A stretch of DNA of 64,000 nucleotides from Selaginella moellendorffii (GCF_000143415.4 NW_003314308.1:1399350-1463349); one strand, 5' to 3'; counted from the stretch's first letter, positions 35,379 to 64,000 are shown. The notes: a model not told the origin generated them from the letters alone. Numbers and translations: made by a program.

Positions 35379-35393
35379 GTGATTATAACTTTG

Positions 35394-37979
35394 ATGTTCT
35401 GCCATGCTCCAAGTGGACTACTGGTCACTGCAGATCTCGAAGAAGATCGTCTTCGCATTTCAAGTCCAACCACAGGCTCAAAGGATTGGTATGCGTCTCG
35501 GCTGAGAAGTTGTCACGGGTTAGACGAAGGTAGAAGCATCCATGCCAGCATTCGTTCCAGCGGCCATGGTGGAAGCCGTTTCCTGGGGAATCTCCTGGTC
35601 CAGATGTATGGTAAGCATGGTAACTTCGATCTCGCGCTTGAAACGTTCGGCCACATTCAAGAGCCAAACGTTTTCTCTTGGACCATCTTGATTGCAGCAT
35701 TTGCCCGGAATGGCCATTACCAGCGGGCATTTGAGCTCCTGTGCAGAATGCAAAACGAGGGAGTGAGATTCAACGCGGTGACAATCTCGAGCGTGTTGAC
35801 GGCTTGCAGGGACATCAAACAGGCTCGAGAACTGGAAAGGCTGGCAGCAGTGGCTGGTTTTGGGGGCGAGGAGAGGATACTTCGCAGCCTCATCCATGCG
35901 TATGGAGAATGTGGTAGTGTGGACGACGCTCGGGAGGTTTTTGACGCCATGGAAGCTGCTGGAGACCTTGTCTCTTGCACGGCTTTGATGGGAGCGTATG
36001 CTCGAAACGGGTATAGCGTGGAAGCTCTGAGGCTGTTCCAGAAGATGAGCTTGGAAGGCGTCAGGCTCGACAAGATCAGCTTTGTGAGCGTCATAAACGC
36101 ATGTGCCTGTGCTAGAGACTTGCGGCGAGGTAAGCTCTGTCACGAGCTCTTGACACAAACTGGTTTGGACACTGATTTGACTTTGCAGAACACTCTCCTG
36201 AGCATGTATGGGAAGTGTGGAATGCTCGACGAGCTGCACGATATGTTCTGCATTATACAAGCTCCAGACACTGTTTCCTACAACTCGATCATCTCGGCTC
36301 TTGCTCACAACTCCCAGCCTAGGCAAGCTCTCTTTTTATTTCGATGTATGCTGCTTGACGGCAGTCTACCAAGTCTAGTCACATTCATCTCTGTCGCTCA
36401 CGCTTGCGGGTGCATAGGTGATTCTAGGCCAGCTGCGGTTATCTGTTCGCTGATTCGAGAGTGTTGTGGAGTTACCACCAGCAATTCGGTTTTGAGATCG
36501 GCTATAGTTGTGATGCATGGAAGGTGTGGAGACGTGGAAGCAGCAAGGGAGGCTTATGAATCTTACGCAAAGGACGAGCTAGGCTGCACGTCAATGGTTG
36601 CTGCATACGTTCAAAACCACAAATTTGGTCGAGCTCTGGGCTTGTTCCGACGCATGCACCTCGAAGGCATTAAGCCCAACAAGGTAACCTTTCTCAGCGC
36701 TCTCGATGCATGCAGCAACACTGGAGATTCTTCTCAAGCGAAAACTGTCCATGGTTGTGTTATTGACGCAGGATACGAGACGGACCACGAGATTGGGAAC
36801 GCGAGAATCAGCATGTACGGGAAATGTGGGAGTTTGGAGCAAGCCAGAAAACTCTTCGACATGAAAACGTACAAGGACGTGCTCACTTGGACAGGAATGG
36901 CGGGAGCTTATGCACGTAACAAGGAAGAAACTCAAGGTCTGAAGCTCTTTAAGGAGATGCAACTCAACGGGATCAAGCCGAACAAGGTAGCGTTTGTGGT
37001 GGCATTGGATGCCTGTGCTAACTCGGGCAGCAGCTTCGTTCTGTCGCAAGGGAGGAGACTTCACGAACAGGTTAGCGAGAGCGCGCTTGAAAGGGACACT
37101 GCAGTGGGAAACTGCCTTATAAACATGTACGTCAGCTGCGGGAGCTTGGAAGACGCAAGGACGCAGCTAGAGAAGATGGAGAACCAGAGGAACTTGACTT
37201 CGTGGAACACTATGGTGTGTGGACTCGCCAGGAGCAGCGGGCACGAGGAGCAGGCTCTGGACCTGATTTCCCTCATGGACTTGGAGGGAGTAGCACCCGA
37301 TGTCATCACCTTTTCCAGCGCTCTTGAGGCTTGTGCTAGCACCGCAGCTCTAGCTCGCGGCCAAATGATCCATGCTCGGATTGTCGAGAGTGGTGATGCG
37401 CTCGATCTTCACACGAATTTGGTTCTGGGGACTTGCCTCGTCAACTTATACGGCAAGTGCGGCAGTCCAGAGAGAGCAAGACAGGTGTTTGAGGAAATTC
37501 GTAGTAGCGGCGACACCGTCTTGTGGAATGCAATGATCGGAGCTTATACTCGGCACGGGCGTGTCGGGGAGGCAGTGGAGCTGTTCCAGGCTTTAGTTGT
37601 CGAGGGCGTTGCTCCAGACAAGGTGACCTTCGTCTCCATCCTGGCTGGCTTTTGCCATGGCTGCCATCAGCAGGAGGAAGCTGCGGCCGCGGAGCATTTT
37701 CTTCTTATGGACGAGTTCATGATTAACCCGGGAGTCGAGCACTTCACTTGCTTGATGGATCTTTTGGCGAGGAAAGGGCGGCTTCTTGAGGCCGAGGAAC
37801 TGCTCAAGGCAATGCCGTTTCAACCCCAAGGAATCAACCTGGTGTCGCTCTTGGCCGCGTGCAAGCGCTACCAGGAGGTCGAACGAGCCGAGTCAACCGC
37901 CGAGTTTATCATGAAGCTTGATCCCACACAAGCACCGGCTTACGTGCTCTTGTCCGATGTGTATGCTGCTGCAGCCTAG
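35394..37979 (+). CDS. PLS-class PPR protein ending in an E domain, intronless
   Basis: First in-frame ATG at 35394. Many MYGKCGS and WNxMI motifs, ending EHFTCLMDLLAR..AYVLLSDVY. Confidence 0.93.
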   Translation: MFCHAPSGLLVTADLEEDRLRISSPTTGSKDWYASRLRSCHGLDEGRSIHASIRSSGHGGSRFLGNLLVQMYGKHGNFDLALETFGHIQEPNVFSWTILIAAFARNGHYQRAFELLCRMQNEGVRFNAVTISSVLTACRDIKQARELERLAAVAGFGGEERILRSLIHAYGECGSVDDAREVFDAMEAAGDLVSCTALMGAYARNGYSVEALRLFQKMSLEGVRLDKISFVSVINACACARDLRRGKLCHELLTQTGLDTDLTLQNTLLSMYGKCGMLDELHDMFCIIQAPDTVSYNSIISALAHNSQPRQALFLFRCMLLDGSLPSLVTFISVAHACGCIGDSRPAAVICSLIRECCGVTTSNSVLRSAIVVMHGRCGDVEAAREAYESYAKDELGCTSMVAAYVQNHKFGRALGLFRRMHLEGIKPNKVTFLSALDACSNTGDSSQAKTVHGCVIDAGYETDHEIGNARISMYGKCGSLEQARKLFDMKTYKDVLTWTGMAGAYARNKEETQGLKLFKEMQLNGIKPNKVAFVVALDACANSGSSFVLSQGRRLHEQVSESALERDTAVGNCLINMYVSCGSLEDARTQLEKMENQRNLTSWNTMVCGLARSSGHEEQALDLISLMDLEGVAPDVITFSSALEACASTAALARGQMIHARIVESGDALDLHTNLVLGTCLVNLYGKCGSPERARQVFEEIRSSGDTVLWNAMIGAYTRHGRVGEAVELFQALVVEGVAPDKVTFVSILAGFCHGCHQQEEAAAAEHFLLMDEFMINPGVEHFTCLMDLLARKGRLLEAEELLKAMPFQPQGINLVSLLAACKRYQEVERAESTAEFIMKLDPTQAPAYVLLSDVYAAAA

Positions 37980-52210: not shown

Positions 52211-53137
52211 ATGAATGGCCTGCGTTACCGTGAAGTCTGCCGATGGTAGGGTTCTGGGCGAGGAAAGATTCAATCCGCAAGAGCCAAGGAAGGTGGTGCT
52301 CCAGGTCTATGGGTCTGGATGTCTTACGGGCATGCATTTCTGGACGAGAGTGTGGAGGCCGGCAAATACATCTACGAACTAGGTGAATGTGAAAGCATCG
52401 ATTTTGCGTGGCTATGGCGTTGCACTGACTATTTGTTTCTGTGACAGTGCCTCCTCTAACAACACTTCATGCTGTAGCATGTAGGCCCTTTTTTGAACGA
52501 ATTTCTGGTAGGTGCTATGATCTTATCTTATCCTTCGAGTGTTTGCGTGGCCTGTGTGTATAGCTCGTCGGTGTGTTTATGATGCGGCTGGTTTTTGTTG
52601 ATAAGTGTACGAAGGGAATTTCGTTGGTTAATGTTTTTACTCTAAATTGTTCTCAATGTTGTGACTGCTGATACGTCAGTTGGGTTCACAAAGTGTACTT
52701 GTTTTAGTATTTTATTGGGGGCCATGGTTTTTCACATGATAAGTGTGCACCTGTTTCTGCAGTTGCTACCGCTGCTGCTCCTGTTGTCCCTGCTGGCAAG
52801 TATCTTGTCTTGCTCCTAAGGACGTTCGTCATTTAGTTGCCTGGGTGGGTTAATTTCTAAGCGTTGTTGCTGTGGGAATGCAGATGCTATTCGACAATTG
52901 ACTGAGTTTTGGAGAAAGTGTCAGACAAGTAGGCCGGAGCCTGGTGGACATGTGGTGAGTTTTGAACAAGATGAGCATTGGAGCGCCATGCTGGAATGGT
53001 ATCTATGTGCGTAAGTGCTTTAAGGCCTTCCGGGAAAGAGCGCTGGCTGCATGGGAGGGCTCACATGTTCACGTAACTGGGCCACCATGGATAGGCAAGT
53101 CGATGTTCCTGTGGTACATGATCATGGAGGCTGCTGC
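52211..53137 (+). pseudogene. 5' part of a Crinkler/RHS-type P-loop NTPase gene interrupted by the retrotransposon
   Basis: LTEFWRK, a frameshift near 52990, then GIYVRKCF...VHVTGPPWIGKSMFLWYMI. The LTR begins at 53138. Confidence 0.6.
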
Positions 53138-53510
53138 TGGAAACCTCCCCTAACACATGCACGCCCAGGAGCAGCTACACTCACGACTGAAAGCCAGGTT
53201 CAAACGGCTACTAGTTTATTTTCTCTATTCTAGGCATATACTGGCGGTTAGAACCGCCAACAGGAGAGTGGTTTTGAGAGACCCCAGCGCAGCTAGGGTT
53301 CCCCATCTCCTTTCCCATTCCATTGTACTTCAAGACTCCTGAATCGCATCCCCTATTTGCATTATCTTTGACTTGAGTCTCTCTCCCCGCCGATCCACCA
53401 CTTCTTTCACCCCTCCTCAGCTGGCGACCTCTGGAGATCAGGCGCCAGTTCTCAGATCGAGTTCTAGCAGTAGCAGCATTCTCATCCATCTCACATTTTC
53501 CCATTGAACA
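53138..53510 (+). repeat. 5' LTR (373 bp, TG...CA)
   Basis: TGGAAACCTC...TTGAACA, repeated from 63670 and followed by TT and the PBS. Confidence 0.93.
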
Positions 53511-53512
53511 TT

Positions 53513-53529
53513 TGGCGACCACGGTGGGA
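53513..53529 (+). other. Primer binding site, probably tRNA-Arg
   Basis: TGGCGACCACGGTGGGA is complementary to a tRNA 3' end TCCCACCGTGGTCGCCA, which resembles plant tRNA-Arg(UCG) as recalled. Confidence 0.8.
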
Positions 53530-53646
53530 TGGATCGCTGAGAGAGATCAAGGAACGAGAACCCGGTAACTATTTGCATTTTTCGAAATTTTCTTGTTTGC
53601 AGAGATTCAAGAACTTCAAGAACCACTCTTTCTCTCCACATCGAGT

Positions 53647-54681
53647 ATGCCACCACCAACATGGGTACCCGGAACACGCCTTGCTGCAGCGACCACTAGA
53701 GGAAGAAAACTACACCAGCAAATTTTCGAAGAAATTAAAGATCTTTCAACGAGACCTCCTAGCGCTCTATCCGAACGAGGAGAAGAAGACCTTTGCGATC
53801 AACCCCAACATCAGCACCGAACTCTTCACCGGCCAGCACCGAGGAACCGACAGCAAGCCCGAGCATCTCCTCCGAGATCTTCTCCGACCAGCAATCTGAG
53901 AGCCCAACTCCGAATTCGAGCAGAAGAACACCGGCTGCAAGCCAGAGAACTCGCCGGCAGAGCCTCCGAACTCTTCTCCGACAACAACTCTGCTTTACCG
54001 ACCAGACAACAGAACAGCAAGAATTCCGGCAACAGATCTTCCCGACCAACGCTTCTTCCACACATCAGCCGCACGTTTTCCTACGACGAGCCTCCGACAC
54101 TCTATCCCGGCATCGCCCAAGTCACCGAAGGAAAGCTCCCGAATGCACCAACAATCTTCCGACAGACTCTCCGACTGAGCGCCCAAACCAGCACCGAAGA
54201 CATCATCCGACGACGACACGACGCTAATCTCCACGCTGCCAAGACTCTGTTCGACCACGCCATCGAGTACGCTGGCCTAGAGACCATTGACGACGAAATT
54301 GGGTCTGATCACCCCAACCAGTCCGACTATCCGAAACTCTTCGTCGAGCTTCATCTCGGCACCGGCACCTGGAAGACCAGCCTGCACTCAGCACCTCGTC
54401 ACGACAAATCGATTGGAAACTCCACCAACAAGCCCAAGCCGAAGAAAGAAACGAAGAAGAAACTCCTGGAGTACGACTGCTACCCACTTCTGGACGAGTT
54501 TTCCTCTGAGTGCCCGAACACCAGCCCGGACAACATCCAGACAACTTCTTCGACCGACCTGCATGACAGCTCTCCAATCACTGCTACACCGAATCAGTCA
54601 ACTCCCCGACGAGCTCCAAGAAATCATCCGGCAGAAGACTCGCGACCTTCTTCCGGCAACACACTTTGTTCAATTGACTGA
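53647..54681 (+). CDS. Extra ORF upstream of gag, unknown function
   Basis: Open frame of about 344 codons from ATG 53647 between the PBS and gag. No recognised motif. Confidence 0.45.
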   Translation: MPPPTWVPGTRLAAATTRGRKLHQQIFEEIKDLSTRPPSALSERGEEDLCDQPQHQHRTLHRPAPRNRQQARASPPRSSPTSNLRAQLRIRAEEHRLQARELAGRASELFSDNNSALPTRQQNSKNSGNRSSRPTLLPHISRTFSYDEPPTLYPGIAQVTEGKLPNAPTIFRQTLRLSAQTSTEDIIRRRHDANLHAAKTLFDHAIEYAGLETIDDEIGSDHPNQSDYPKLFVELHLGTGTWKTSLHSAPRHDKSIGNSTNKPKPKKETKKKLLEYDCYPLLDEFSSECPNTSPDNIQTTSSTDLHDSSPITATPNQSTPRRAPRNHPAEDSRPSSGNTLCSID

Positions 54682-54926
54682 TGGCATCCTCCTACTAGCA
54701 TAGTAACCCTTAGAAGATTCTACAATAGAAGACTAGCTTCGAAGCTGCAGGCCCGAAGATATTTCCGGAGCCTTGAGATTATCGTCGACACCGATTCGAC
54801 ATTCAGCCAGATACCCGACAACATCACCGACAACCAAGTTAAGAGTTTGATGAAGACCTTCATCCCCGAGATACCAACATCCAAGATAATTTTAGTGTAC
54901 AAGAACCCACGGCCGTAGAGAGCCGC

Positions 54927-57900
54927 ATGAACAAACCGAGGAAAGCAGCCAGCAAACAACAAGAAGACACCGAAAGACTTCAACGATACCTCCAGCGAGA
55001 GTTGAAGAGACTAGAGAAAGAGAGAAAAGAAAAAGCCACCCAGTGGTCCCACTTTGTACAAGTTTCTGAAAGAGAAAGGTACATTACTGATGAATTGTTT
55101 CCCAAAATTGCAGCCGGCGAAGATGCCGGAAGGGTTTTAGAAGGCTACCAGAATTTTAGGACACCACCTGCTTCTCCGACTGCAGCACCGGAGAACCCGC
55201 CAGAAACCCAGCCAGAAGTTCAGCACACTCCCCAGCACAGCTTCCACAATCCACTCTTCCAAGGACAGACCGACCCAAGAACTTATTTCTCCTGGACTGT
55301 ACCGACAGCTTCACCAGCAGTCCTCGGCACATTGTTTTCGACACCAGTATCAGCTTCTACCTCGACCACACCGTTCGCCTCCGCACCGGACTTCTATAAT
55401 TTCCAGCAACAACCAGACTCCCCGAAGCTCAACTCAGTCGAATACGGCCTCCGACCTATATACATTGTCGACCCAGACGATCGACCAGCACATCACCAGC
55501 AATACGAGTTCGGCCAATCCTCCGAATACACACTCAACCAACTTTTTGACCAGGCGTTCAGCAGACCCCACCAACAACCAGAACCAGACATCAATCTTCA
55601 GCAACCAGACTTACAGGTAATACTCCGACAATCCTCTCCGGAGACCTTGCTGCAGCCTGCCGAAGAACCTCTGCTACCATCAACATCAACACTGCCACCA
55701 CAAAACACTCCAACAACTGCTCCGTCAAACGTCCCGCCAAACGCTCCACCGAACACTCTGCCACACAGTCTACCAGACATTCCCCCAGACATCATCACCA
55801 TGACAATGGTACTCCCCAACACGGTCATCGGCAAGCTTGTCACCTACCCACAATTCAAAGGGAAGAAGACCGAAGATCCAGAAAAGCACGTCATTCGCTT
55901 CAAGGAGGCTGCCCGAGTCAACGGCCAGCAAGACAACCTCGCATTCCTCTTTGGCTGCACCCTCAAAGGACGCGCCGGAGAATGGCTCCAGACGACCGAC
56001 TCGAAACTCACCTTCGACGAGCTTACCAAAGCCTTCACCGACCACTTTAAGTCAGCACTCAGCCAATCAGAGAAGCTTCAGAAGATACAGAACATCAAGA
56101 TGCGTACTGGTGAAACTCTCGAAGAATACACCGAACGCTTCACCAAACACGCCAACCGCTGCAAGAGCTCTTCTACTGACATACTTTTATACCAATGGTA
56201 CATGCAGGGACTAGCTTCACACTTGAAGAAAGCTGCCACCAAAATCGACACCAGCGATTACAAGACTCTTTCCAAAGACTTGAAAGAAGTTCAAATCCGC
56301 CGACAAACTGCCCGAGTTGATGAACCGGAAGACTTCGACTCCGAGGAAGATGAGGACGACCTCCTCGACAGCCTCACCGGCAAGTCAAAGGACAAAGTCG
56401 GCATCCGAAAGATCCAGAAGCTCCTCACCAAATTCACTGCATCCAGCGACAAATCCGATGTCCGAACCGGCGTCTGGTGCACAAAATGCAAGAATGAAGG
56501 ACACTCAGCCACCGACTGCAAACTCCAGCTCGTTAAGTGTCAAATCTGCGGGAAAGACAACCATGACGCCAAGACATGCAGATTCCGTAGCCAACCTGAA
56601 GTCCGACAAATCTCCAATTTCCCCCGGAGACCTCCCCGACAGCCTGAGTATTCGACCCAATATCCGGCCGCACCTCCAAACAACTGGAGACCGCCCCGGA
56701 ACAACTACCTGCCGCGACAATGGAACGCACCACCGAGATTCAACAACAACTACAACAACCGACCCTACTACAATGACCGATACCAACAACCCGACAACCG
56801 GCCATACCAACAATACCGACAAAACCAGATGGACTACAACAACAGCCAAGCCTATCCACGCTACCAGAATCAAGGGTATCAAGGCTACAACCGATATCAA
56901 GGCTATCAAGACCAGAGATATCAAGGCAACTACAACAGCCGCCCATGGCAACCCCGAATCCCAGACCAGCCCGGCCCTCCAAGACTCGGACCACCGCCGC
57001 CTAGACAGCCAGACCAACAGCAACAGCAACCACCGGCAACCAGACTCATCGAAGCCGACGAACTCCCATTTCCCGAAGAAGACCCAGAACCACAAGTTCT
57101 GGCAGTCCAGACTCGAGCACAACTTCGAGCACAGCACCAACAACAACCGGATAAAGACTCAAACACCGAAGATGACACGAGCTCAGAGCGCTCGAAACAA
57201 ACCCCGGAGTGGAAGAAACGCCGACAGCTAGCTGCCAAAGTACAAAAGCACCTTACTCAACAGCCACCCGAACTAGTCATCCTCGACTCCGAAGACGAAG
57301 AACAGCCCGAGTCAAGCACACAGCAACCGAGAAACCAGCCGACAGCTTCACCGGCACAACTTTTGGCCAACTCGATTGGAGATACAACTGTCGCTGAATC
57401 CATCCTCACCCAGAACATCCAGATCACTGTTGGCCAACTTCTGAAGATCGCTCCATATCTCGTCAACCAACTGGTAAGTCTGACTAATCCTCTGGACACA
57501 CCTCCAATGGACGCCCCAGCACTGAATACCAGTAAGGACACTGTTGACGCCTTTCAAGCTGAGATACAACCCGGAGACTGCGACAATGAAGTTCCAACCA
57601 TCGACCTCCGAATCGGCCGACACCAAGTCCGAGGAGCCATGCTTGATGGCGGCTATGGCGTCAACATCATCGAAGAGAGTCTTGTCCGACAAATCAACCT
57701 CGGTCCAGTTGAGCCAGCACCGTTTAACGTCCGAATGGCCGACCACCGATCAGTCCGACCCCGAGGAATTATCCGGAATGTCATCACCAATATCAGAGGC
57801 ATCAGAGTTCCAGTCAACTATGTCATCCTCAAGCTTCCGAAGAACTCCGACGGCTATGCAGTCCTCCTCGGACGCCCGTGGCTCAAACACGCTCGAGCAA

Positions 57901-60900
57901 TGCACAACTGGTCGACCAACCAGATCTTTCTCCAAGGCCCGCAAGGTCCAGTAACAGTCTCGACAAACTCGTCGAAACACCTTCCGACGAACATACGACC
58001 GGTCGACCTCGAAGACTATGACCTCGAAACCGGCCTCGACGACTATGAAGAACAGCAAATACTCCAAGCCTACCCCGACCTCGAACCCCTCGCCGAAATC
58101 GACATCTTTAGAGTAGCAGCCGACTTCAGCCGAGAGCGACCCCAGCTTACCGAAGCATTGAAGAACCCGACAACCAGAGACACCACCATCGCCACTCAGC
58201 CAGCATTCATTGTCGACTCCGACCAGAAAGTCGCCTATGTCCCGACAATACCGACCAACCAACCTCTCGAGAAGATCAACCTTGCCACCGACCAGAATCA
58301 GCATCACATCATCCTCGCCAAAGACATCTCTGAGAGTTTCCGGAACAAAGGCCTGAGACTCCTCCAGAAGAAAAAGCACTTGTTTGCTTGGAGCTACAAA
58401 GACCTGAAAGGAGTCTCACCGGACTTATGTCTCCACACCATCACCCTCCTCCCGGATGCCCGGCCGAAGCGACAGGCACCTTACCGGATGAACCCAAACC
58501 TCATGGAGCAAGTCAAGAAGGAGCTCGACAAACTCCTCGAAGTCGAATACATCTACCCGATCCAGAATCCGATCTGGTTGTCTCCTCTGGTCGTTGTGCC
58601 GAAGAAAAACGGCAAGCTCCGAATCTGCGTCAACTACAAGCAGCTCAACGACGTCACCAACAAAGATATCTTCCCGATACCCTTCACCGACGAAGTTCTT
58701 GACGCAGTCGCCGGACACGAAATGTACTCCTTCCTCGACGGATTTTCCGGCTACAATCAGATCACCATCGCCCAAGAAGACCAGCACAAGACAGCATTCA
58801 TCAGCCCATGGGGAGCATACGCCTACCGAAGAATGCCTTTCGGCCTCTGCAATGCACCCTTTACTTTCCAACGACTCGTCACCAACACCTTCCGAGACTA
58901 CCTCACCGACTTCATGCGAGTCTTCATGGACGACTTCAGTGTCTTCAGCTCCGAAGACTGCCATCTCGAATGCCTCGAGAAATGCCTCGAGAAGTGCGAA
59001 GAAAACAACATCGCCCTCAACCCCGAGAAATGTGCCTTCTTCGTCAAGTCCGGAGTACTTCTCGGCCACATTGTCTGCAAAGATGGCATACTCATCGACA
59101 AAGACAAAGTCGAAGTCATACTTCAGCTCGACCCACCAAAGAACCAGAAGGACCTTCGAAGATTTCTCGGCAAGATCGGATACCACCGAAGATTCATCCA
59201 CAAGTACGCTGACATCGCCAAACCTCTCACCGATGGCCTCCGGCTCGACGCCCAGTGGATCTGGTCGGACACTCAGCAGACAGCATTTGACAACCTCAAG
59301 CTCAAGCTCACTACCGCACCAATACTCGCCAAACCAGATTGGACCAAAGAGTTCCATATCCATGTCGACACCTCTGACATCGGCACCGGCACAGTGCTTA
59401 GCCAAGCCCAGAGAGACAACCGAGACCAGCCGATTTACTACGCAAGCAGACTACTCACCTCGACAGAACGCAACTACACCACCACCGAGAAAGAAGCCCT
59501 CGGCATGGTATACGCCCTCCAGAAGTTTCGGCACTACATTCTTTCGAGCAAAGTCATCATCTTCGTTGACCACAAGGCCCTCCTTTACCTCATCAACAAG
59601 CCCATACTCTCCGGCCGAATTTCCAGATGGTTCCTTCTACTCCAAGAGTACAACTTTGAAATCGTCCACAAGCCCGGCCGACAGCATGAACAGGCCGACT
59701 TCCTCAGCCGCATCACCACAGGAGAATCGCCCGATCGACTCGCCGACGATTTGCCCGACTCCAACCTTTTCCGAATTTCAGTACCAGCAACATGGCTCGA
59801 CGACATCTTCGCCTACCTCAGCTCAGCAAAAGTCCCAGCTCAACATACAACACCAGACCAGAGAAAAACTTTTGTCTCGAAAACCCGCCGGTACTCCATC
59901 ATCGGCGGCAGCCTTTACAAACTCGGCATCGACAACATACTTAGACGATGCATCAAAGTTCCAGAGACCCTCCGGATTATAAACGAAGCACATTCTGGAC
60001 CGTCCGGCGGCCACTTCGCCTCCGACACAACCGTCCGGAAGATTCTCCAGTCAGGACTCTGGTGGCCGACAATGTGGCGAGACACCGAAGACTTCTGCCG
60101 GAAATGTGACACCTGCCAGAGGAATCGACTTCCGCCGAAAACTCAGAGTCAACCGCTCAACCCAACCTTCCCGGTCGCGCCTTTCCAGAGATGGGGGCTC
60201 GACTTCGTCGGACCCCAAATCACCACAGCCCGGAAGAACCAGTACATCATTGTCGCCACCGACTATGCCACCAAATGGGCCGAAGCAGCTCCCCTCAAGC
60301 AAGCAACCGCCAAGGCAACAGCCAAGTTCATCTACGAGAACATCATCACCCGCTTTGGAACACCACTCGAACTCGTCACCGACCGCGGCAGCCACTTCAT
60401 CAACGAAACCATCACACACCTTACCGAAGAGTTCCAGATCCGACACAAAACATCAACGCCCTACTACCCGCAAGGCAATGGCCAAGCCGAAGCCACCAAC
60501 AAGACGCTCAAGACAATTCTCAAGAAAGTCATCAGCGATTCTGGCAAAGATTGGGACGAGAAACTCGGAGACGTTCTCTGGGCCTACCGGACAGCATACA
60601 AGATCACCACCGACATGACACCGTTCAAGCTCGCCTTTGGAATAGAAGCCATAACACCAATCGAGTTCATCATTCCTAGCATGCGTGTCGCGGTGAAGTA
60701 CGACCTGGATCCCCGGCACATCTTCCGGCAACGACTGCTCGAACTCGAGAAACTCGACGAGCTCCGACTCAACGCCTTGTGGACCCTCCACACCATCCAG
60801 AAGCAAAGAAAAGCCCGGCACGACCGAAGACTCGCTCGAAACAAGACTCCGAAGTACTCTCCCGGCGATCATGTACTCTGGTATCGAGGACCAATCACTC

Positions 60901-63653
60901 AGCTCGGCAACAAGCTCAAAACCAAGTGGCAAGGACCTTTCATCATCACCGAACTCTACCCCAACTCGACAGCGAACGTCGCCACCCTCGCTGGAGACTT
61001 CACCGAAACTGTCAACCTCAACAAGCTCCGACCATACTACGTAGACCTCTGCAACATCCAGACCACATTTCAGCAACACTTCCGACCGCAACTCATCACC
61101 GGAACCGAGAGATTCCCCGAACACTCTCCCGGCCACTCGAACCGAACACTCGACACCAGCCGTCCGTATCGAGAAGCAACACCAGATGATACCACAATGA
61201 GCATCATCGACAATCAGCAAGCCTTGTGGCATCAACAATGGCCAACACGCTACTCAGAAACCATCACCACCAACTTCTCCTGGACAACCCTTCAGTTGCC
61301 ACTCAATTTGGCACAAAACGCTGAGTCCCAAGCTACCGTCCGATCAACTCCACGAGATCAGATCTGCACCGTCCAACAGCGCTCAATCTCAGCCGCCAGA
61401 TCATCATCTCCACAACAGATCACAGCCCTCAGATCTTGCCACGCAATCGCCACCGTTCAAACTAAACCCCACCAAGTTTCACAGGACACAAACCTAAGTC
61501 GCCAACAGCAGCTCGCCAGCACCCTTTCCAGCGCGCCACCAGCTCCAACAACGATGCCCAAGCGCAAGATGAGAGCCATTCCCCCAAGACGCCTCAGGTA
61601 TGTCCGCCACAGCTTGCCCAAGCTTCCGACCGAGGCAGTCACGGCATGGCTGGTCGAGCAGGGGTTCGGCCAGCTCCTCGAGATCTTCAAAACCCCATTT
61701 GATCACCACCTCGCCCGCAAGCTTGCCAAGAAGTATGACGAGAGCCGCAACACGATCTCGGATGACGTCAACACCATCGCCATCACGCCGGCCCTGCTCA
61801 GCAAAGTTTTCAAGATCCCTCGAAAAGGACTCGACAAGTTCCCCAAAGAGGTTCCCAAGGTCATCCTCAAGCCAGGTGCATCCCCAACCACAGAAGGGCC
61901 CAAGTGGGAGGATGTTCTTTCTGAACACCAGGAGAAGCTGCGTGCCCTGCTCCTCCTCTACGACCTCCGCCCCACTGACAAATCTATCAGCAAGCTTACC
62001 ACCCAAGCCTATCACGCCATGGACCGAGGAGAGCGAGTCAATGTCGCCAGCCACTTGAACACTATGCTGGCAAAGCAACTGAAGAAAATCAATGAGAAAC
62101 CTACGAGAGGCCAAACCATCTCCACCGTGATCTTCCCGATGCTCATCGCTTTGCACGCCGCCCACCCCAACAAGCAGCCCTGGTCTACCAGCTCCTCAAC
62201 TGAACACAGCCACACTGACGACGACGACTCAGCATCGACCGAGACCCTGCCCTCACCACCGCACAAGAAGAAAGCCCAACCCTCCTCATCGAAGCATCAT
62301 ACGCCACCCAGCCCCACCCCCAGCAAGACCAGCAGCGAAGAAACCTCATCCGACGAAGAATCTCCACCACCTCGCCGCCACAAGCTTCGTCAACCTCCTC
62401 AACGTAAGAACTGCCACCGCAGCACGGAGTACGTCGTCCTCACCAGCAGGGACACCACAAACACCACACAACCCCGCCAGCACCAGCACCAATCAATTCC
62501 AAGCCAACCCCGAGCTCGTTCACCTTCTCCAACACCAATCTTCAACAACTCACAAGCTTTCACTGACGACCAGCACCACGACAACAATGATTCCCATCAC
62601 CCAGACAATATCACCGCCAGCAACAGCAAGATTTCCAGCGGGCACGTCAACTCCGGCAACGTTAAACCTCTCCATCCATCAGCAGCACATCCGACTCTCA
62701 ACACCACACAAGATGCCCCGTTGAACTTCAACAAAAATCCGAGCTCTTCATCAAATATTACAGCGCCTCATCTCGACCATCCATCTTCAACGACCATAAT
62801 TAAATTTGCGCCATGTCAAATCTTAACAAACTTGACAAATCAGCGCAGTCCATCTGCATCCGCTCAGCCTCAGCCACCTCAGCAGCAATCAACGCCCCAA
62901 ATCACGCCGGCCGACCCCATCAAGAACCCAGCTCCCGACTCAGTTTCAGCGCCCTACGGCTCGCCTTTCGCGCCTTCTCCACCAGTCCAAGCATCTCAGC
63001 CGCACCAGCAATCCACCATGCCTCCACTCCAATCCCAGGTACGCAAAGACAGAGCCTCCTTCGACCACGAAATCCGCCAAGAACACGAAGACAAGATGCA
63101 AGATCCCGGATACCTCCATCGCAAGCTCTTCGAGGCTCTGGAGCGCCGCGCCAGTCATGACATCAGCCAGGCCATCCGAGGCCGCGTCCCCCAGGCTCAG
63201 GACATCGCCCAGCACCTCTCCCGCGATGGTGCCTTCATCAACACCAGGAACGCAGTCCGCGCTGAGTTCTACGAGCCGCTCGTCGCGGAGATTGGCAACC
63301 TCCACAACACCATTCACCACCTCCAGGGCGACATCCAGAGCATCAAGACAACGGCCGCCAGCTCTTCTCGCGCCAACAACAACCCCACTGGCCAACAGAA
63401 CTACTGGCGAGACAAGTACCACCACGGAGTCACCGTCATCCAGGAGCACCAGCAGCGCATTGACCATCTTGAAGCGCTCCTTGCCGAGTATGAGGATGAT
63501 GATGGCTCAGACCCGCCCGACAGTGAGCCCAACGATAACCTAACCCTCCCCCAGCAGCGCCGCCGACTGCGACGCCTGCAGCGAGCTCCGGAAGCGAACC
63601 AACTCCACCACCAAGCAATGGACACTGATCATGGCCCCGAGGACGGAGCCTAG
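54927..63653 (+). CDS. Gag-Pol polyprotein (2908 aa) with C-terminal PMD-like extension
   Basis: Two CCHC knuckles (56478-56579), protease MLDGG (about 57640), RT FMDD (58923-58934), RNase H VDTS/TEKE/DHKAL, integrase HHCC with WGLDF, TDRGSHF and NGQAE, and GPF (about 60935). Confidence 0.96.
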   Translation: MNKPRKAASKQQEDTERLQRYLQRELKRLEKERKEKATQWSHFVQVSERERYITDELFPKIAAGEDAGRVLEGYQNFRTPPASPTAAPENPPETQPEVQHTPQHSFHNPLFQGQTDPRTYFSWTVPTASPAVLGTLFSTPVSASTSTTPFASAPDFYNFQQQPDSPKLNSVEYGLRPIYIVDPDDRPAHHQQYEFGQSSEYTLNQLFDQAFSRPHQQPEPDINLQQPDLQVILRQSSPETLLQPAEEPLLPSTSTLPPQNTPTTAPSNVPPNAPPNTLPHSLPDIPPDIITMTMVLPNTVIGKLVTYPQFKGKKTEDPEKHVIRFKEAARVNGQQDNLAFLFGCTLKGRAGEWLQTTDSKLTFDELTKAFTDHFKSALSQSEKLQKIQNIKMRTGETLEEYTERFTKHANRCKSSSTDILLYQWYMQGLASHLKKAATKIDTSDYKTLSKDLKEVQIRRQTARVDEPEDFDSEEDEDDLLDSLTGKSKDKVGIRKIQKLLTKFTASSDKSDVRTGVWCTKCKNEGHSATDCKLQLVKCQICGKDNHDAKTCRFRSQPEVRQISNFPRRPPRQPEYSTQYPAAPPNNWRPPRNNYLPRQWNAPPRFNNNYNNRPYYNDRYQQPDNRPYQQYRQNQMDYNNSQAYPRYQNQGYQGYNRYQGYQDQRYQGNYNSRPWQPRIPDQPGPPRLGPPPPRQPDQQQQQPPATRLIEADELPFPEEDPEPQVLAVQTRAQLRAQHQQQPDKDSNTEDDTSSERSKQTPEWKKRRQLAAKVQKHLTQQPPELVILDSEDEEQPESSTQQPRNQPTASPAQLLANSIGDTTVAESILTQNIQITVGQLLKIAPYLVNQLVSLTNPLDTPPMDAPALNTSKDTVDAFQAEIQPGDCDNEVPTIDLRIGRHQVRGAMLDGGYGVNIIEESLVRQINLGPVEPAPFNVRMADHRSVRPRGIIRNVITNIRGIRVPVNYVILKLPKNSDGYAVLLGRPWLKHARAMHNWSTNQIFLQGPQGPVTVSTNSSKHLPTNIRPVDLEDYDLETGLDDYEEQQILQAYPDLEPLAEIDIFRVAADFSRERPQLTEALKNPTTRDTTIATQPAFIVDSDQKVAYVPTIPTNQPLEKINLATDQNQHHIILAKDISESFRNKGLRLLQKKKHLFAWSYKDLKGVSPDLCLHTITLLPDARPKRQAPYRMNPNLMEQVKKELDKLLEVEYIYPIQNPIWLSPLVVVPKKNGKLRICVNYKQLNDVTNKDIFPIPFTDEVLDAVAGHEMYSFLDGFSGYNQITIAQEDQHKTAFISPWGAYAYRRMPFGLCNAPFTFQRLVTNTFRDYLTDFMRVFMDDFSVFSSEDCHLECLEKCLEKCEENNIALNPEKCAFFVKSGVLLGHIVCKDGILIDKDKVEVILQLDPPKNQKDLRRFLGKIGYHRRFIHKYADIAKPLTDGLRLDAQWIWSDTQQTAFDNLKLKLTTAPILAKPDWTKEFHIHVDTSDIGTGTVLSQAQRDNRDQPIYYASRLLTSTERNYTTTEKEALGMVYALQKFRHYILSSKVIIFVDHKALLYLINKPILSGRISRWFLLLQEYNFEIVHKPGRQHEQADFLSRITTGESPDRLADDLPDSNLFRISVPATWLDDIFAYLSSAKVPAQHTTPDQRKTFVSKTRRYSIIGGSLYKLGIDNILRRCIKVPETLRIINEAHSGPSGGHFASDTTVRKILQSGLWWPTMWRDTEDFCRKCDTCQRNRLPPKTQSQPLNPTFPVAPFQRWGLDFVGPQITTARKNQYIIVATDYATKWAEAAPLKQATAKATAKFIYENIITRFGTPLELVTDRGSHFINETITHLTEEFQIRHKTSTPYYPQGNGQAEATNKTLKTILKKVISDSGKDWDEKLGDVLWAYRTAYKITTDMTPFKLAFGIEAITPIEFIIPSMRVAVKYDLDPRHIFRQRLLELEKLDELRLNALWTLHTIQKQRKARHDRRLARNKTPKYSPGDHVLWYRGPITQLGNKLKTKWQGPFIITELYPNSTANVATLAGDFTETVNLNKLRPYYVDLCNIQTTFQQHFRPQLITGTERFPEHSPGHSNRTLDTSRPYREATPDDTTMSIIDNQQALWHQQWPTRYSETITTNFSWTTLQLPLNLAQNAESQATVRSTPRDQICTVQQRSISAARSSSPQQITALRSCHAIATVQTKPHQVSQDTNLSRQQQLASTLSSAPPAPTTMPKRKMRAIPPRRLRYVRHSLPKLPTEAVTAWLVEQGFGQLLEIFKTPFDHHLARKLAKKYDESRNTISDDVNTIAITPALLSKVFKIPRKGLDKFPKEVPKVILKPGASPTTEGPKWEDVLSEHQEKLRALLLLYDLRPTDKSISKLTTQAYHAMDRGERVNVASHLNTMLAKQLKKINEKPTRGQTISTVIFPMLIALHAAHPNKQPWSTSSSTEHSHTDDDDSASTETLPSPPHKKKAQPSSSKHHTPPSPTPSKTSSEETSSDEESPPPRRHKLRQPPQRKNCHRSTEYVVLTSRDTTNTTQPRQHQHQSIPSQPRARSPSPTPIFNNSQAFTDDQHHDNNDSHHPDNITASNSKISSGHVNSGNVKPLHPSAAHPTLNTTQDAPLNFNKNPSSSSNITAPHLDHPSSTTIIKFAPCQILTNLTNQRSPSASAQPQPPQQQSTPQITPADPIKNPAPDSVSAPYGSPFAPSPPVQASQPHQQSTMPPLQSQVRKDRASFDHEIRQEHEDKMQDPGYLHRKLFEALERRASHDISQAIRGRVPQAQDIAQHLSRDGAFINTRNAVRAEFYEPLVAEIGNLHNTIHHLQGDIQSIKTTAASSSRANNNPTGQQNYWRDKYHHGVTVIQEHQQRIDHLEALLAEYEDDDGSDPPDSEPNDNLTLPQQRRRLRRLQRAPEANQLHHQAMDTDHGPEDGA

Positions 63654-63656
63654 ATC

Positions 63657-63669
63657 AAGCAGGGGGCAG
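63657..63669 (+). other. Polypurine tract
   Basis: AAGCAGGGGGCAG immediately before the 3' LTR. Confidence 0.8.
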
Positions 63670-64000
63670 TGGAAACCTCCCCTAACACATGCACGCCCAG
63701 GAGCAGCTACACTCACGACTGAAAGCCAGGTTCAAACGGCTACTAGTTTATTTTCTCTATTCTAGGCATATACTGGCGGTTAGAACCGCCAACAGGAGAG
63801 TGGTTTTGAGAGACCCCAGCGCAGCTAGGGTTCCCCATCTCCTTTCCCATTCCATTGTACTTCAAGACTCCTGAATCGCATCCCCTATTTGCATTATCTT
63901 TGACTTGAGTCTCTCTCCCCGCCGATCCACCACTTCTTTCACCCCTCCTCAGCTGGCGACCTCTGGAGATCAGGCGCCAGTTCTTAGATCGAGTTCTAGC
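63670..64000 (+). repeat. 3' LTR (partial)
   Basis: Matches 53138-53468 with one visible mismatch (C53453/T63985). Confidence 0.95.

What the first reader, a model, noticed from the sequence alone, without database searches (positions are those of the whole stretch)
61554..63653. Plant Mobile Domain-like cargo fused in frame to the C-terminus of a retrotransposon polyprotein
Seen: the ORF does not stop after integrase. It continues for about 870 codons up to 3 nt before the PPT. At ATG 61554 a self-contained 699-aa unit begins: basic NLS-like MPKRKMR, a globular block WLVEQGFGQLLEI..FDHHLARKLAKKYDESRNTI..IAITPALLSKVFKIPRKG...ERVNVASHL, an S/P/H/Q-rich tract and heptad coiled coils. Known: the GF..L..D..L...IT......LP..G spacing is that of the PMD (PF10536) N-terminus. 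PMDs occur as separate extra ORFs in some Ty3/gypsy elements, and host MAIN/MAIL1 PMD proteins act in silencing control. Inference: this could be an element-encoded chromatin or anti-silencing factor, made either tethered to integrase in place of a chromodomain or from a subgenomic RNA. Caveat: this strand is T-poor, so stop codons are rare and the linker may be open by chance.
Basis: partly seen in the sequence, partly recalled or inferred. Interest (0 to 1): 0.8.

Follow-up and report, generated by a model that had tools for sequence, protein, structure and literature searches.

The report
Retrotransposon integrase fused to accessory protein
A young Ty3/gypsy retrotransposon of the spikemoss Selaginella moellendorffii encodes one 2,908-residue protein whose last ~870 residues are real coding sequence; they show no Plant Mobile Domain and instead look like the extra 3' ORF protein of Athila-like elements joined in frame to integrase.

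Summary
One ORF (54927-63653, 2,908 aa) runs gag-PR-RT-RNaseH-integrase and then continues about 870 codons to a stop directly before the PPT-like tract and 3' LTR. LTRs match at 330 of 331 bases. Zero stops against about 15 expected excludes chance for the whole extension, though not for the 171-codon linker alone.

The PMD reading is not supported. Pfam gives no PMD, DUF1985, Transposase_28 or Transposase_32 match, and 1.84 billion protein representatives give no relative. AlphaFold without an alignment failed, so the fold is untested.

Relatives explain the region:
- Nearly all related polyproteins stop 0-25 residues after integrase, but their contigs carry large sense ORFs between integrase and the 3' LTR.
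- In the closest clade these ORFs hold a ~200-aa helical domain followed by coiled coils.
- The window's basic block (aa 2229-2427) matches a profile of that domain (hhalign 74%, E 2.8e-5; controls ≤2.7%).
- One clade member touches Transposase_32 below Pfam's cutoff.
- More distant relatives carry true Transposase_32 or ATHILA ORF-1 in the same position.

So this is an Athila-type 3' accessory ORF fused to integrase, as in 1 of 8 relatives. Its function is unknown. I could reach no sister copies of the element.

The parts
53138..53510 (+). 5' LTR. The start is defined by identity with the 3' LTR. The end is inferred from a CA two bases before the PBS-like TGG.
   Evidence: 330 of 331 compared bases are identical to 63670-64000.
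53513..53529 (+). Primer-binding-site-like sequence starting with TGG. The tRNA was not identified.
   Evidence: sequence read; one search found no tRNA gene in the window to compare with.
53593..54681 (+). Extra 5' ORF (362 codons from TTG; first in-frame ATG at 53647). No family match.
   Evidence: Coding-frame signal is positive only in its middle.
54927..63653 (+). A single uninterrupted gag-pol-extension ORF of 2,908 aa, with no stops or frameshifts.
55950..56579 (+). Capsid-like gag domain (aa 342-452) and two CCHC zinc knuckles (aa 518-551).
57570..57935 (+). Aspartic protease (aa 882-1003).
   Evidence: a profile of protease-like domains hits here, E 2.7e-27.
58596..59651 (+). Reverse transcriptase (aa 1224-1382) and RNase H (aa 1446-1575).
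59967..61040 (+). Integrase: zinc-binding domain, catalytic core and C-terminal region (aa 1681-2038). Relatives' polyproteins end 0-25 residues after this point.
61041..61553 (+). T/Q/S-rich linker (aa 2039-2209) with no coding-frame signal. Its openness could be chance.
61554..61610 (+). Internal Met 2210 followed by basic, NLS-like clusters (aa 2210-2228).
   Evidence: That it acts as an NLS is inference only.
61611..62207 (+). It is a divergent member of the domain family found in the 3' ORFs of the closest relatives.
   Evidence: BLASTP E 7e-4; hhalign 74.2%, E 2.8e-5; hmmsearch E 0.02 over the full domain; coding-frame signal; helical, low confidence.
62208..63032 (+). S/P/T/Q/H-rich spacer predicted to be unstructured (aa 2428-2702).
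63033..63494 (+). Long alpha-helices, coiled-coil-like (aa 2703-2856), with a strong coding-frame signal.
   Evidence: 10-residue block means of pLDDT up to 94; weak ZapB-type coiled-coil hit.
63495..63653 (+). Acidic/basic C-terminal tail (aa 2857-2908) and the stop codon TAG.
63654..63669 (+). Purine-rich PPT-like tract directly after the stop.
63670..64000 (+). 3' LTR, cut by the end of the window, which is also the end of the scaffold.

Best explanation
The window ends in a young, unbroken, non-chromovirus Ty3/gypsy LTR retrotransposon of Selaginella moellendorffii. Its last ~870 codons are the counterpart of the 3' additional ORF that related elements carry between integrase and the polypurine tract.

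That module has three parts: a basic ~200-residue helical domain (aa 2229-2427), a ~275-residue disordered S/P/T-rich spacer, and a ~150-residue coiled coil. In most relatives the module is a separate ORF. Here, and in one relative, no stop separates it from pol, so it is translated as a C-terminal extension of integrase within one 2,908-aa polyprotein.

Shown:
- The frame is open beyond chance.
- The domain and the coiled coil have the codon-position pattern of the element's pol genes.
- The domain matches a profile of the relatives' domain.
- In a pair of relatives that domain and coiled coil evolve under purifying selection.

Inferred:
- The domain family is a far-diverged branch of the Transposase_32 / ATHILA ORF-1 kind found in Athila 3' ORFs.
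- The protein is an oligomerising, nucleic-acid- or chromatin-binding accessory factor. In this element it enters the particle in equal amount with integrase.
- It acts in the nuclear steps, meaning import or tethering of the integration complex. It may stay attached to integrase or be released by the element's protease.

The biochemical function remains unknown.
For: Open frame. There are 0 stops in 878 codons against 12 and 26 in the other frames. Shuffles gave a mean of 14.7, with 0 of 2,000 reaching zero.

Coding signal. The codon-frame likelihood is 0.17-0.30 per codon over the domain and 0.39 over the coiled coil. Gag scores 0.25-0.32 and integrase 0.37-0.49.

The extension is extra. Of the 120 listed pol relatives (out of 1,171 hits), nearly all end within 25 residues of aa 2037-2047.

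Relatives hold large sense ORFs after integrase.

The domain family:
- Groups A and C are related (hhalign 86%).
- The window's domain against the A+C profile built without it gives 74.2%, E 2.8e-5 over 141 columns.
- Thirty shuffled controls scored at most 1.0% and 60 natural controls at most 2.7%.
- hmmsearch puts the window at E 0.02 over the full domain length, the best hit outside the training set apart from L008, a known family member.
- Pairwise BLASTP to the L002 ORF is colinear over ~180 residues, E 7e-4.

Shared architecture. Relatives' ORFs also have coiled-coil-type weak hits after the domain.

Selection in relatives. For L009 against L010, dN/dS is 0.12 in the domain, 0.17 in the coiled coil and 0.05 in the integrase C-terminus.

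Link to known families:
- The L007 domain hits PF20167 at E 3.9e-5 over almost the whole profile, and scores 70.6% by hhalign against 11 Transposase_32 domains.
- Seven more distant relatives have Transposase_32 at 100-154 bits in the post-integrase ORF.
- Three have ATHILA ORF-1 at 88-100 bits.
- A sunflower Athila 3' ORF with Transposase_32 and an NLS is described in PMC11728184.

Placement. The integrase tree puts the window inside the A/B/C clade.
Against: - The window's domain itself has no significant match to any Pfam family. Directly against Transposase_32 alignments it scores only 2-5%.
- The link to Transposase_32 rests on one bridging sequence, L007, which is below Pfam's cutoff. 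Group C alone scores 0.3%.
- The link between the window and the A+C family is moderate (74%; E 0.02 in a small database), not conclusive.
- No relative of the 869-aa extension was found among 1.84 billion representatives or by the word searches.
- No sister copy was available, so selection on this extension and the constancy of the fusion are untested.
- The linker and the spacer carry no coding-frame signal.
- No structure of usable confidence exists for the domain.
Confidence: 0.55

Rival explanations
1. The block is a Plant Mobile Domain (PF10536) cargo, related to the PMD extra ORFs of Ogre elements and to host MAIN/MAIL1.
For: PMD is a known extra-ORF domain, found in 57% of Ogre elements (PMC6317226). 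The block is helical and basic and lies in an accessory position. A very remote superfamily link between PMD and the Transposase_32-like domains cannot be excluded with these tools.
Against: PF10536 does not match the polyprotein, the 699-aa unit, the 215-aa or 111-aa pieces, or any of six relatives' domains, even at E<=10. No relative's post-integrase ORF hit PMD, whereas Transposase_32 and ATHILA ORF-1 did. No archaeal-type RNase H, the mark of the Tat/Ogre clade, was found.
Confidence: 0.06
2. The extension is not functional protein. The T-poor strand makes stops rare, and a former 3' untranslated region simply reads open in a young copy.
For: T is 15% on this strand. The linker (aa 2039-2209) and the spacer (aa 2428-2702) have no coding-frame signal. 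The linker's openness has P about 0.05 by the off-frame stop rate. No relatives were found in the protein databases.
Against: The whole extension is open against an expectation of about 15 stops (0 of 2,000 shuffles). The domain and the coiled coil have pol-like codon structure. The domain matches a family under purifying selection in relatives. Low-complexity parts of the bona fide gag region show the same lack of frame signal.
Confidence: 0.1
3. The module is the same accessory protein, but it is mainly made on its own from ATG 61554 through a spliced or subgenomic RNA. The in-frame joining to integrase would then be incidental.
For: In 7 of 8 relatives the domain is not in the same stop-free frame as integrase. 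Three are in the same frame with stops between and four are in another frame. A Met followed by basic clusters sits 19 residues before the domain. Separate 3' ORFs are the norm in Athila-like elements.
Against: There is no stop between integrase and the domain here or in L008. Nine Met codons lie in the extension, so the one at 2210 is not special. No transcript data were available, and no splice or promoter evidence was obtained.
Confidence: 0.17
4. The extension is an envelope-like protein, as proposed for some Athila 3' ORFs.
For: It sits after integrase and has a coiled coil.
Against: There is no hydrophobic segment of transmembrane strength (maximum 19-residue Kyte-Doolittle mean 1.12). 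There is no signal-peptide-like N-terminus, since the start is strongly basic. The domain has net charge +16.
Confidence: 0.02
5. The block is a recently captured host gene fragment or a lineage-specific de novo sequence with no kin in other elements.
For: There were zero hits in 1.84 billion representatives. No Pfam family matched.
Against: The annotated Selaginella proteome is part of the databases searched and gave no hit (the host PPR gene of this window is on record). The profile match to relatives' post-integrase domain is in the right place and covers its full length.
Confidence: 0.1

Closest known systems
3' additional ORF of Athila-like Ty3/gypsy elements carrying Transposase_32 (PF20167) / ATHILA ORF-1 (PF03078), for example the sunflower Athila 14 ORF(+) (PMC11728184)
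   Same: It is the first coding module downstream of integrase on the sense strand. The helical domain of about 180-200 residues starts 20-130 residues into the module. Basic NLS-like clusters are present. Distant relatives of the window's element found here carry exactly these Pfam domains in that position. One close relative (L007) touches PF20167.
   Different: The window's domain does not itself match either Pfam family. It is fused in frame to integrase rather than being a separate ORF. It is followed by a long disordered spacer and a coiled coil. The host is a lycophyte rather than a seed plant.
Plant Mobile Domain (PF10536) extra ORFs of Ogre elements, and host MAIN/MAIL1 (PMC6317226, PMC7156037, PMC5418596)
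   Same: It is an accessory, non-enzymatic domain carried by a plant Ty3/gypsy element.
   Different: No PF10536 match was found in the window or in any relative. The element has no Tat/Ogre-type second RNase H.
Chromodomain fused to the integrase C-terminus in chromoviruses (for example SM2-Galahad of Selaginella, PMC3350952)
   Same: An accessory module is translated in frame after integrase. That arrangement in chromoviruses serves target choice (from general knowledge of the family).
   Different: There is no chromodomain match here. The module is about ten times longer and of another kind. The known Selaginella families are 4.9-7.5 kb with polyproteins of up to 1,577 aa, against about 10.9 kb (counting a full 3' LTR) and 2,908 aa here.
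The unnamed post-integrase domain family in metagenome contigs (groups A and C of this report: L002, L004, L007, L008, L009, L010, L011, L012, L044, L050, L062)
   Same: The profile match covers the full domain. The position after integrase is the same, a coiled coil follows, and the elements fall in the same integrase clade.
   Different: Identity is only 16-19%. Most members hold the domain in a separate ORF.

Membership tests
Plant Mobile Domain (PF10536) | Match to the Pfam PMD profile at or above its gathering score | tested here: not met
   There was no PF10536 hit at E<=1 on the polyprotein, the 699-aa unit and a 500-aa piece (aa 1992-2491) spanning the linker and the domain. There was none at E<=10 on the 215-aa and 111-aa pieces or on 7 aligned domain sequences.
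Plant Mobile Domain (PF10536) | PMD fold | tested here: inconclusive
   The single-sequence AlphaFold2 models had pLDDT 38.9 (215 aa) and below 50 over the domain in the 699-aa model. They were too poor for a fold search.
Plant Mobile Domain (PF10536) | Carried by Ogre/Tat-clade elements, which have a second archaeal-type RNase H | tested here: not met
   Pfam finds only the ordinary RT-linked RNase H. The integrase clusters with elements whose post-integrase ORFs are of other kinds.
Transposase_32 (PF20167) / ATHILA ORF-1 (PF03078) | Match of the window's protein to the Pfam profile at or above the cutoff | tested here: not met
   No hit. hhalign of the window's domain against Transposase_32 alignments gave 0.7-4.7%.
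Transposase_32 (PF20167) / ATHILA ORF-1 (PF03078) | Homology through intermediate sequences | tested here: inconclusive
   The links are: window to A+C profile 74.2%; group A to group C 86%; L007 to PF20167 E 3.9e-5, 21-24 bits against a cutoff of 45; L007 to 11 Transposase_32 domains 70.6%; A+C to the same alignment 28.9%. The local hhalign set-up is insensitive. It gave 1.0% for ATHILA ORF-1 against Transposase_32, although Pfam shows those two overlap.
Transposase_32 (PF20167) / ATHILA ORF-1 (PF03078) | Located in the first sense ORF between integrase and the 3' LTR of a Ty3/gypsy element | tested here: met
   That is the position in L036, L038, L041, L042, L048, L068 and L070 and in L060, L061 and L065. 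The window's domain lies 190 residues after integrase.
Chromovirus integrase chromodomain | Chromodomain after the integrase C-terminal region | tested here: not met
   No Chromo-family hit in the extension.
Envelope-like 3' ORF | Transmembrane segment(s) and a signal sequence | tested here: not met
   The maximum hydropathy is 1.12 over 19 residues, and the N-terminus is basic. No dedicated predictor was available.
Post-integrase helical domain family of groups A and C (unnamed) | Profile match over the full domain, placed after integrase and followed by a coiled coil | tested here: met
   hhalign 74.2%, E 2.8e-5. hmmsearch E 0.02, HMM positions 25-204 of 222. Controls scored at most 2.7%. 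Coiled coil. The support is moderate, not conclusive.
Ty3/gypsy LTR retrotransposon | LTR pair, PBS and PPT, and gag-PR-RT-RNaseH-IN in that order | tested here: met
   The target-site duplication cannot be read because the 3' LTR is cut by the scaffold end.

The most novel reading that the evidence does not exclude
In this lycophyte lineage an Athila-type accessory protein has become a permanent C-terminal arm of integrase. It would take the place that the chromodomain holds in chromoviruses. A basic DNA- or chromatin-binding domain, held on a long flexible spacer and joined into oligomers by a coiled coil, would steer where the element integrates or shield it from silencing. This would give the first handle on what the Transposase_32 / ATHILA ORF-1 class of retrotransposon proteins does. 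It would also show that the class dates back to before the split of lycophytes and seed plants.
Probability: 0.15. Interest if true: 0.7.

Novelty: new variant of a known kind. Interest (0 to 1): 0.45.

Why it matters
Extra ORFs of plant LTR retrotransposons are widespread, very divergent and of unknown function. This case matters for three reasons.

- The module after integrase in a spikemoss element is probably the same kind of module as the Athila 3' ORF of seed plants. That would make the accessory protein ancient rather than a set of repeated independent acquisitions.
- The fused state, one 2,908-aa gag-pol-accessory protein, fixes the module's amount and location relative to integrase. 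That narrows the range of possible roles.
- The family alignment made here gives a starting point for structure prediction, which single sequences could not support.

The PMD and anti-silencing story that made the finding attractive is not supported.

Tried and rejected
Searches that found nothing:
- Word-index protein searches with the domain region inside the polyprotein and with the 699-aa unit returned nothing.
- The exhaustive HMMER search of 1.84 billion representatives with the 869-aa extension returned 0 hits.
- PDB sequence searches with the unit and with the family profile gave only chance-level hits.
- The exact polyprotein is not on record.
- A metagenome scan with the L002 post-integrase ORF found nothing.
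- Rfam found nothing and Tandem Repeats Finder only six short, low-scoring arrays across 53000-64000, none in the domain or coiled coil. There are no tRNA genes in the window.

Structure:
- AlphaFold2 without an alignment on the 215-aa block gave pLDDT 38.9, and on the 699-aa unit only the C-terminal helices were confident.
- I therefore ran no fold search, because matches to such models are meaningless.

Other frames and internal similarity:
- Antisense and off-frame ORFs across the extension have no family match.
- There is no internal similarity between the extension and the rest of the element, and none to the tails of P0005, P0007 or P0097.

Weak hits rejected:
- The PuR_N winged-helix hit (E 0.012-0.15, below cutoff) is treated as chance.
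- The group B post-integrase domain turned out to be a second protease and does not match the window's extension.

Steps left out under the rules:
- In relatives whose domain is interrupted (four copies, once each: three by a change of frame, one by a stop) I used the pieces separately and joined nothing.

Full report
**1. What is there**

The last 10.9 kb of the window is an LTR retrotransposon.
- A direct repeat starts at 53138 and at 63670. It is identical at 330 of the 331 bases that can be compared before the window ends.
- A PBS-like TGG sequence lies at 53513-53529.
- A purine-rich tract (63654-63669) lies directly between the stop TAG (63651-63653) and the 3' LTR.
- One ORF, 54927-63653, encodes 2,908 residues without interruption.

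Pfam finds these domains in the ORF:

| Domain | Residues |
|---|---|
| Capsid-like gag | 342-452 |
| Two CCHC knuckles | 518-551 |
| Reverse transcriptase | 1224-1382 |
| RNase H | 1446-1575 |
| Integrase zinc-binding and core | 1681-1848 |

The protease at aa 882-1003 was located with a profile of related proteases.

The host genes in the rest of the window are those of a land plant: PPR proteins with an E motif, ZF-HD, LRR receptor-like proteins, a GMC oxidoreductase and a SAGA subunit. One PPR protein is on record exactly in Selaginella moellendorffii GCA_000143415.2, scaffold GL377612.1. The coordinates show that the window is the last 64 kb of that scaffold. That is why the 3' LTR is cut and no target-site duplication can be read.

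**2. Check of the observation**

The integrase C-terminal region aligns with relatives up to about aa 2038.
- ATG 61554 is residue 2210, and 699 codons follow it.

The strand is T-poor (15.4% T in the extension), but that does not explain the open frame.
- The other two + frames hold 12 and 26 stops over the same 2.6 kb.
- Dinucleotide-preserving shuffles average 14.7 stops per frame, and none of 2,000 had zero.
- Taken alone, the 171-codon linker (61041-61553) could be open by chance. It has 0 stops against 3 and 3 in the other frames, P about 0.05 by that rate and 0.007 by mononucleotide shuffles.

A codon model trained on PR-RT-RNaseH-IN gives this frame-specific signal:

| Segment | Signal per codon |
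|---|---|
| Basic block (domain) | 0.17-0.30 |
| C-terminal helices | 0.39 |
| Gag | 0.25-0.32 |
| Integrase | 0.37-0.49 |
| Linker | none |
| S/P/T-rich spacer | none |

The low-complexity parts of the undoubted gag region also lack the signal, so its absence does not argue against coding.

**3. The PMD claim**

Pfam gives no PMD, DUF1985, Transposase_28 or Transposase_32 match. This holds for the polyprotein, the 699-aa unit, the 215-aa block and a 111-aa core, at E up to 10. The only hit is a sub-threshold winged-helix family (PuR_N, E 0.012-0.15), which I treat as chance.

No solved structure is related by sequence.

AlphaFold2 without an alignment gave pLDDT 38.9 for the block. In the 699-aa model:
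- The block is helical but of low confidence.
- Residues 203-493 have no structure.
- Residues 494-647 form long helices with 10-residue block means of pLDDT up to 94.

I ran no fold search on these models. At the level of sequence profiles, PMD membership is not met.

**4. No direct relatives of the extension**

- The two word-index searches returned nothing.
- The exhaustive search of 1.84 billion representatives returned nothing.
- The exact polyprotein is not on record.

Transposon genes are often left out of plant annotations, and none of the DNA collections on hand holds plant genomes. So this absence says little about sister copies in Selaginella, which I could not reach.

**5. Relatives of pol and what lies after their integrase**

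The RT-IN part finds 1,171 proteins, the best at about 50% identity. Of the 120 listed, nearly all end 0-25 residues after the position matching aa 2037-2047. The extension is therefore extra.

The contigs of the closest relatives nevertheless hold large sense-strand ORFs between integrase and the 3' LTR.
- L002 has three ORFs of 369, 672 and 317 aa inside an LTR pair.
- L003 has a 402-aa in-frame tail and a 1,134-aa ORF.
- L004 has a 682-aa ORF.

A metagenome scan with an alignment of the integrase C-terminus added 80 loci. In most loci with enough downstream sequence, sense ORFs of at least 100 aa follow integrase, including nearly all of the closest relatives.

Among the closest relatives (whole-integrase tblastn identity 41-49%), three kinds of post-integrase content appear:
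- **Group A**: L002, L004, L007, L008.
- **Group C**: L009, L010, L011, L012, L044, L050, L062. It carries a conserved ~200-250-aa domain followed by coiled-coil-like sequence.
- **Group B**: L003, L013, L014, L015, L016, L017, L019. It carries a second aspartic-protease-like domain directly after integrase.

A neighbour-joining tree of integrase puts the window's element inside this A/B/C clade. It is about equally far from all three groups and apart from the Transposase_32-bearing elements.

**6. The block belongs to the A/C domain family**

- BLASTP of the block against the first post-integrase ORF of L002 gives a colinear alignment over about 180 residues (23% identity, E 7e-4 for the single comparison).
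- Groups A and C match each other by hhalign (86%, E 5e-6).
- A six-sequence A+C alignment made without the window matches the window's block at 74.2%, E 2.8e-5 over 141 columns. The local run and the comparison tool agree.
- Thirty shuffled versions of the block score at most 1.0%. Sixty natural 221-aa segments from the same loci score at most 2.7%.
- An HMM of the same alignment, searched against all 6,775 six-frame pieces of the loci and the window, ranks the window's polyprotein (E 0.02, HMM positions 25-204 of 222, aa 2236-2427) directly after L008, a known member. It ranks above the fragments of L004, and noise starts at E 0.5.
- The register is consistent across the pairwise, A-only, C-only and A+C comparisons.

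I regard the homology as probable, not proven.

The architecture agrees as well. Relatives' ORFs have coiled-coil-type weak hits some 200-400 residues after the domain. The window has a spacer and then confident long helices.

The family is under selection in relatives. For L009 against L010:

| Region | dN/dS |
|---|---|
| Domain | 0.12 |
| Coiled-coil part | 0.17 |
| ORF ends | 0.51 and 0.74 |
| Integrase C-terminus | 0.05 |

**7. Link to known families**

- The domain of L007 (group A) hits Transposase_32 (PF20167) over almost the whole profile, at E 2.5e-4 to 3.9e-5 and 21-24 bits. That is below the 45-bit cutoff.
- Against an 11-sequence alignment of Transposase_32 domains taken from the fetched loci, L007 scores 70.6%.
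- Against the same alignment, the A+C alignment scores 28.9%, the window's block alone 2.2% and group C alone 0.3%.
- In more distant relatives (integrase C-terminus 32-36% identical), the first large ORF after integrase carries a true Transposase_32 domain (100-154 bits in seven loci) or ATHILA ORF-1 (88-100 bits in three loci). In those three, Transposase_32 hits the same stretch below its cutoff.
- The local hhalign set-up is insensitive. It gives only 1.0% for ATHILA ORF-1 against Transposase_32, although Pfam shows they overlap. Low scores there mean little, and L007's score stands out.

A paper on sunflower elements describes an Athila 3' ORF with Transposase_32 at residues 133-312 and a predicted NLS. 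It calls the domain related to Athila ORF-1 (PMC11728184). PMD is instead the extra-ORF domain of Ogre elements (PMC6317226).

The nearest known kind is therefore the Athila-type 3' additional ORF, reached by a chain of moderate links plus equivalence of position.

**8. Fused or separate**

Among eight relatives with the domain:
- One (L008) has it in the same stop-free stretch as integrase.
- Three have it in the same frame with stops between.
- Four have it in another frame.

L009 and L010, which are 86% identical in the 3' ORF, both have pol ending 20 residues after integrase, so a separate ORF looks like a kept state there.

The fusion in the window is therefore a minority state and probably derived. 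Four relatives have the domain interrupted once each (three by a change of frame, one by a stop). I used their pieces apart.

The known Selaginella gypsy families are 4.9-7.5 kb with polyproteins of up to 1,577 aa, so none of them is this element (PMC3350952). The Selgy clade is described as short.

**9. How it most likely works**

Shown: a real coding module of three parts.
- A basic helical domain.
- A ~275-residue spacer without predicted structure.
- A ~150-residue coiled coil.
- There is no membrane segment (maximum hydropathy 1.12).
- The module is translated in the same frame as integrase.

Inferred:
- It is an oligomerising accessory protein that binds nucleic acid or chromatin.
- Because it is made as part of Pol, it enters the particle in equal amount with integrase.
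- It then acts at nuclear import or at tethering of the integration complex, whether attached to integrase or released by the protease.

An anti-silencing role is possible, but nothing here supports it. A separate mRNA from Met 2210 cannot be excluded. The extension has nine Met codons, so that one is not special.

**10. Both strands and other checks**

- Antisense and off-frame ORFs across the extension have no family match.
- There is no Rfam family and no tRNA gene across the element; Tandem Repeats Finder lists only six short, low-scoring arrays, one of them in the linker.
- The protease motif reads D-G-G, which 10 of 49 aligned related protease domains share. It is no defect.

**11. Limits**

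- No sister copies, no transcript data and no usable structure were available.
- The link to Transposase_32 rests on one bridging sequence.
- The relatives come from metagenome contigs of unknown organisms.

**13. Verdict**

The PMD reading is not supported. The best reading is an Athila-type 3' accessory ORF, far diverged, fused in frame to integrase in a young spikemoss element. That makes it a new variant of a known kind, of moderate interest.

Noticed in passing
L003, L013, L014, L015, L016, L017, L019 (for example L017:5792-7150): A subgroup of the closest relatives carries a second aspartic-protease-like domain directly after integrase, in frame where the copy is unbroken. A profile seeded on it retrieves the ordinary proteases of about 40 elements. 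Pfam Asp_protease_2 just passes its cutoff (25.2 against 24.3 bits).
   Followed up: partly
window 56583-57026 (polyprotein aa ~553-700) and 54927-55949 (aa 1-341): There is a Q/N/Y/P-rich, prion-like stretch between the zinc knuckles and the protease, and a 340-residue low-complexity N-terminus before the capsid-like domain. The polyprotein is inflated by low-complexity linkers throughout.
   Followed up: no
window 53593-54681: An extra 5' ORF (362 codons; first in-frame ATG at 53647) lies between the PBS and gag. It has no family match, and its coding-frame signal is positive only in the middle. L002 also has a small ORF in that position.
   Followed up: partly
window 64000 = end of scaffold GL377612.1: The window is the last 64 kb of a Selaginella moellendorffii scaffold. 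The assembly breaks inside the 3' LTR, so the element's 3' end and target-site duplication are missing.
   Followed up: yes
L060:3052-4401, L061:1675-2568, L065:1249-2505: ATHILA ORF-1 (PF03078, above cutoff) and Transposase_32 (PF20167, below cutoff) hit the same stretch of these post-integrase ORFs, so the two Pfam families overlap.
   Followed up: partly
window 1-53000: This is a gene-dense host region: two long PPR genes without introns (29299-32214 on the minus strand, 35379-37979 on the plus strand), a ZF-HD gene, two LRR receptor-like ORFs, a GMC oxidoreductase and a SAGA-Tad1 gene. The element sits next to an LRR gene cluster.
   Followed up: no
P0098, P0099, P0120: These annotated seed-plant 'proteins' mix duplicated or reordered RT, RNase H and integrase parts with a Transposase_32 domain. 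They look like gene models drawn across nested or adjacent elements.
   Followed up: no
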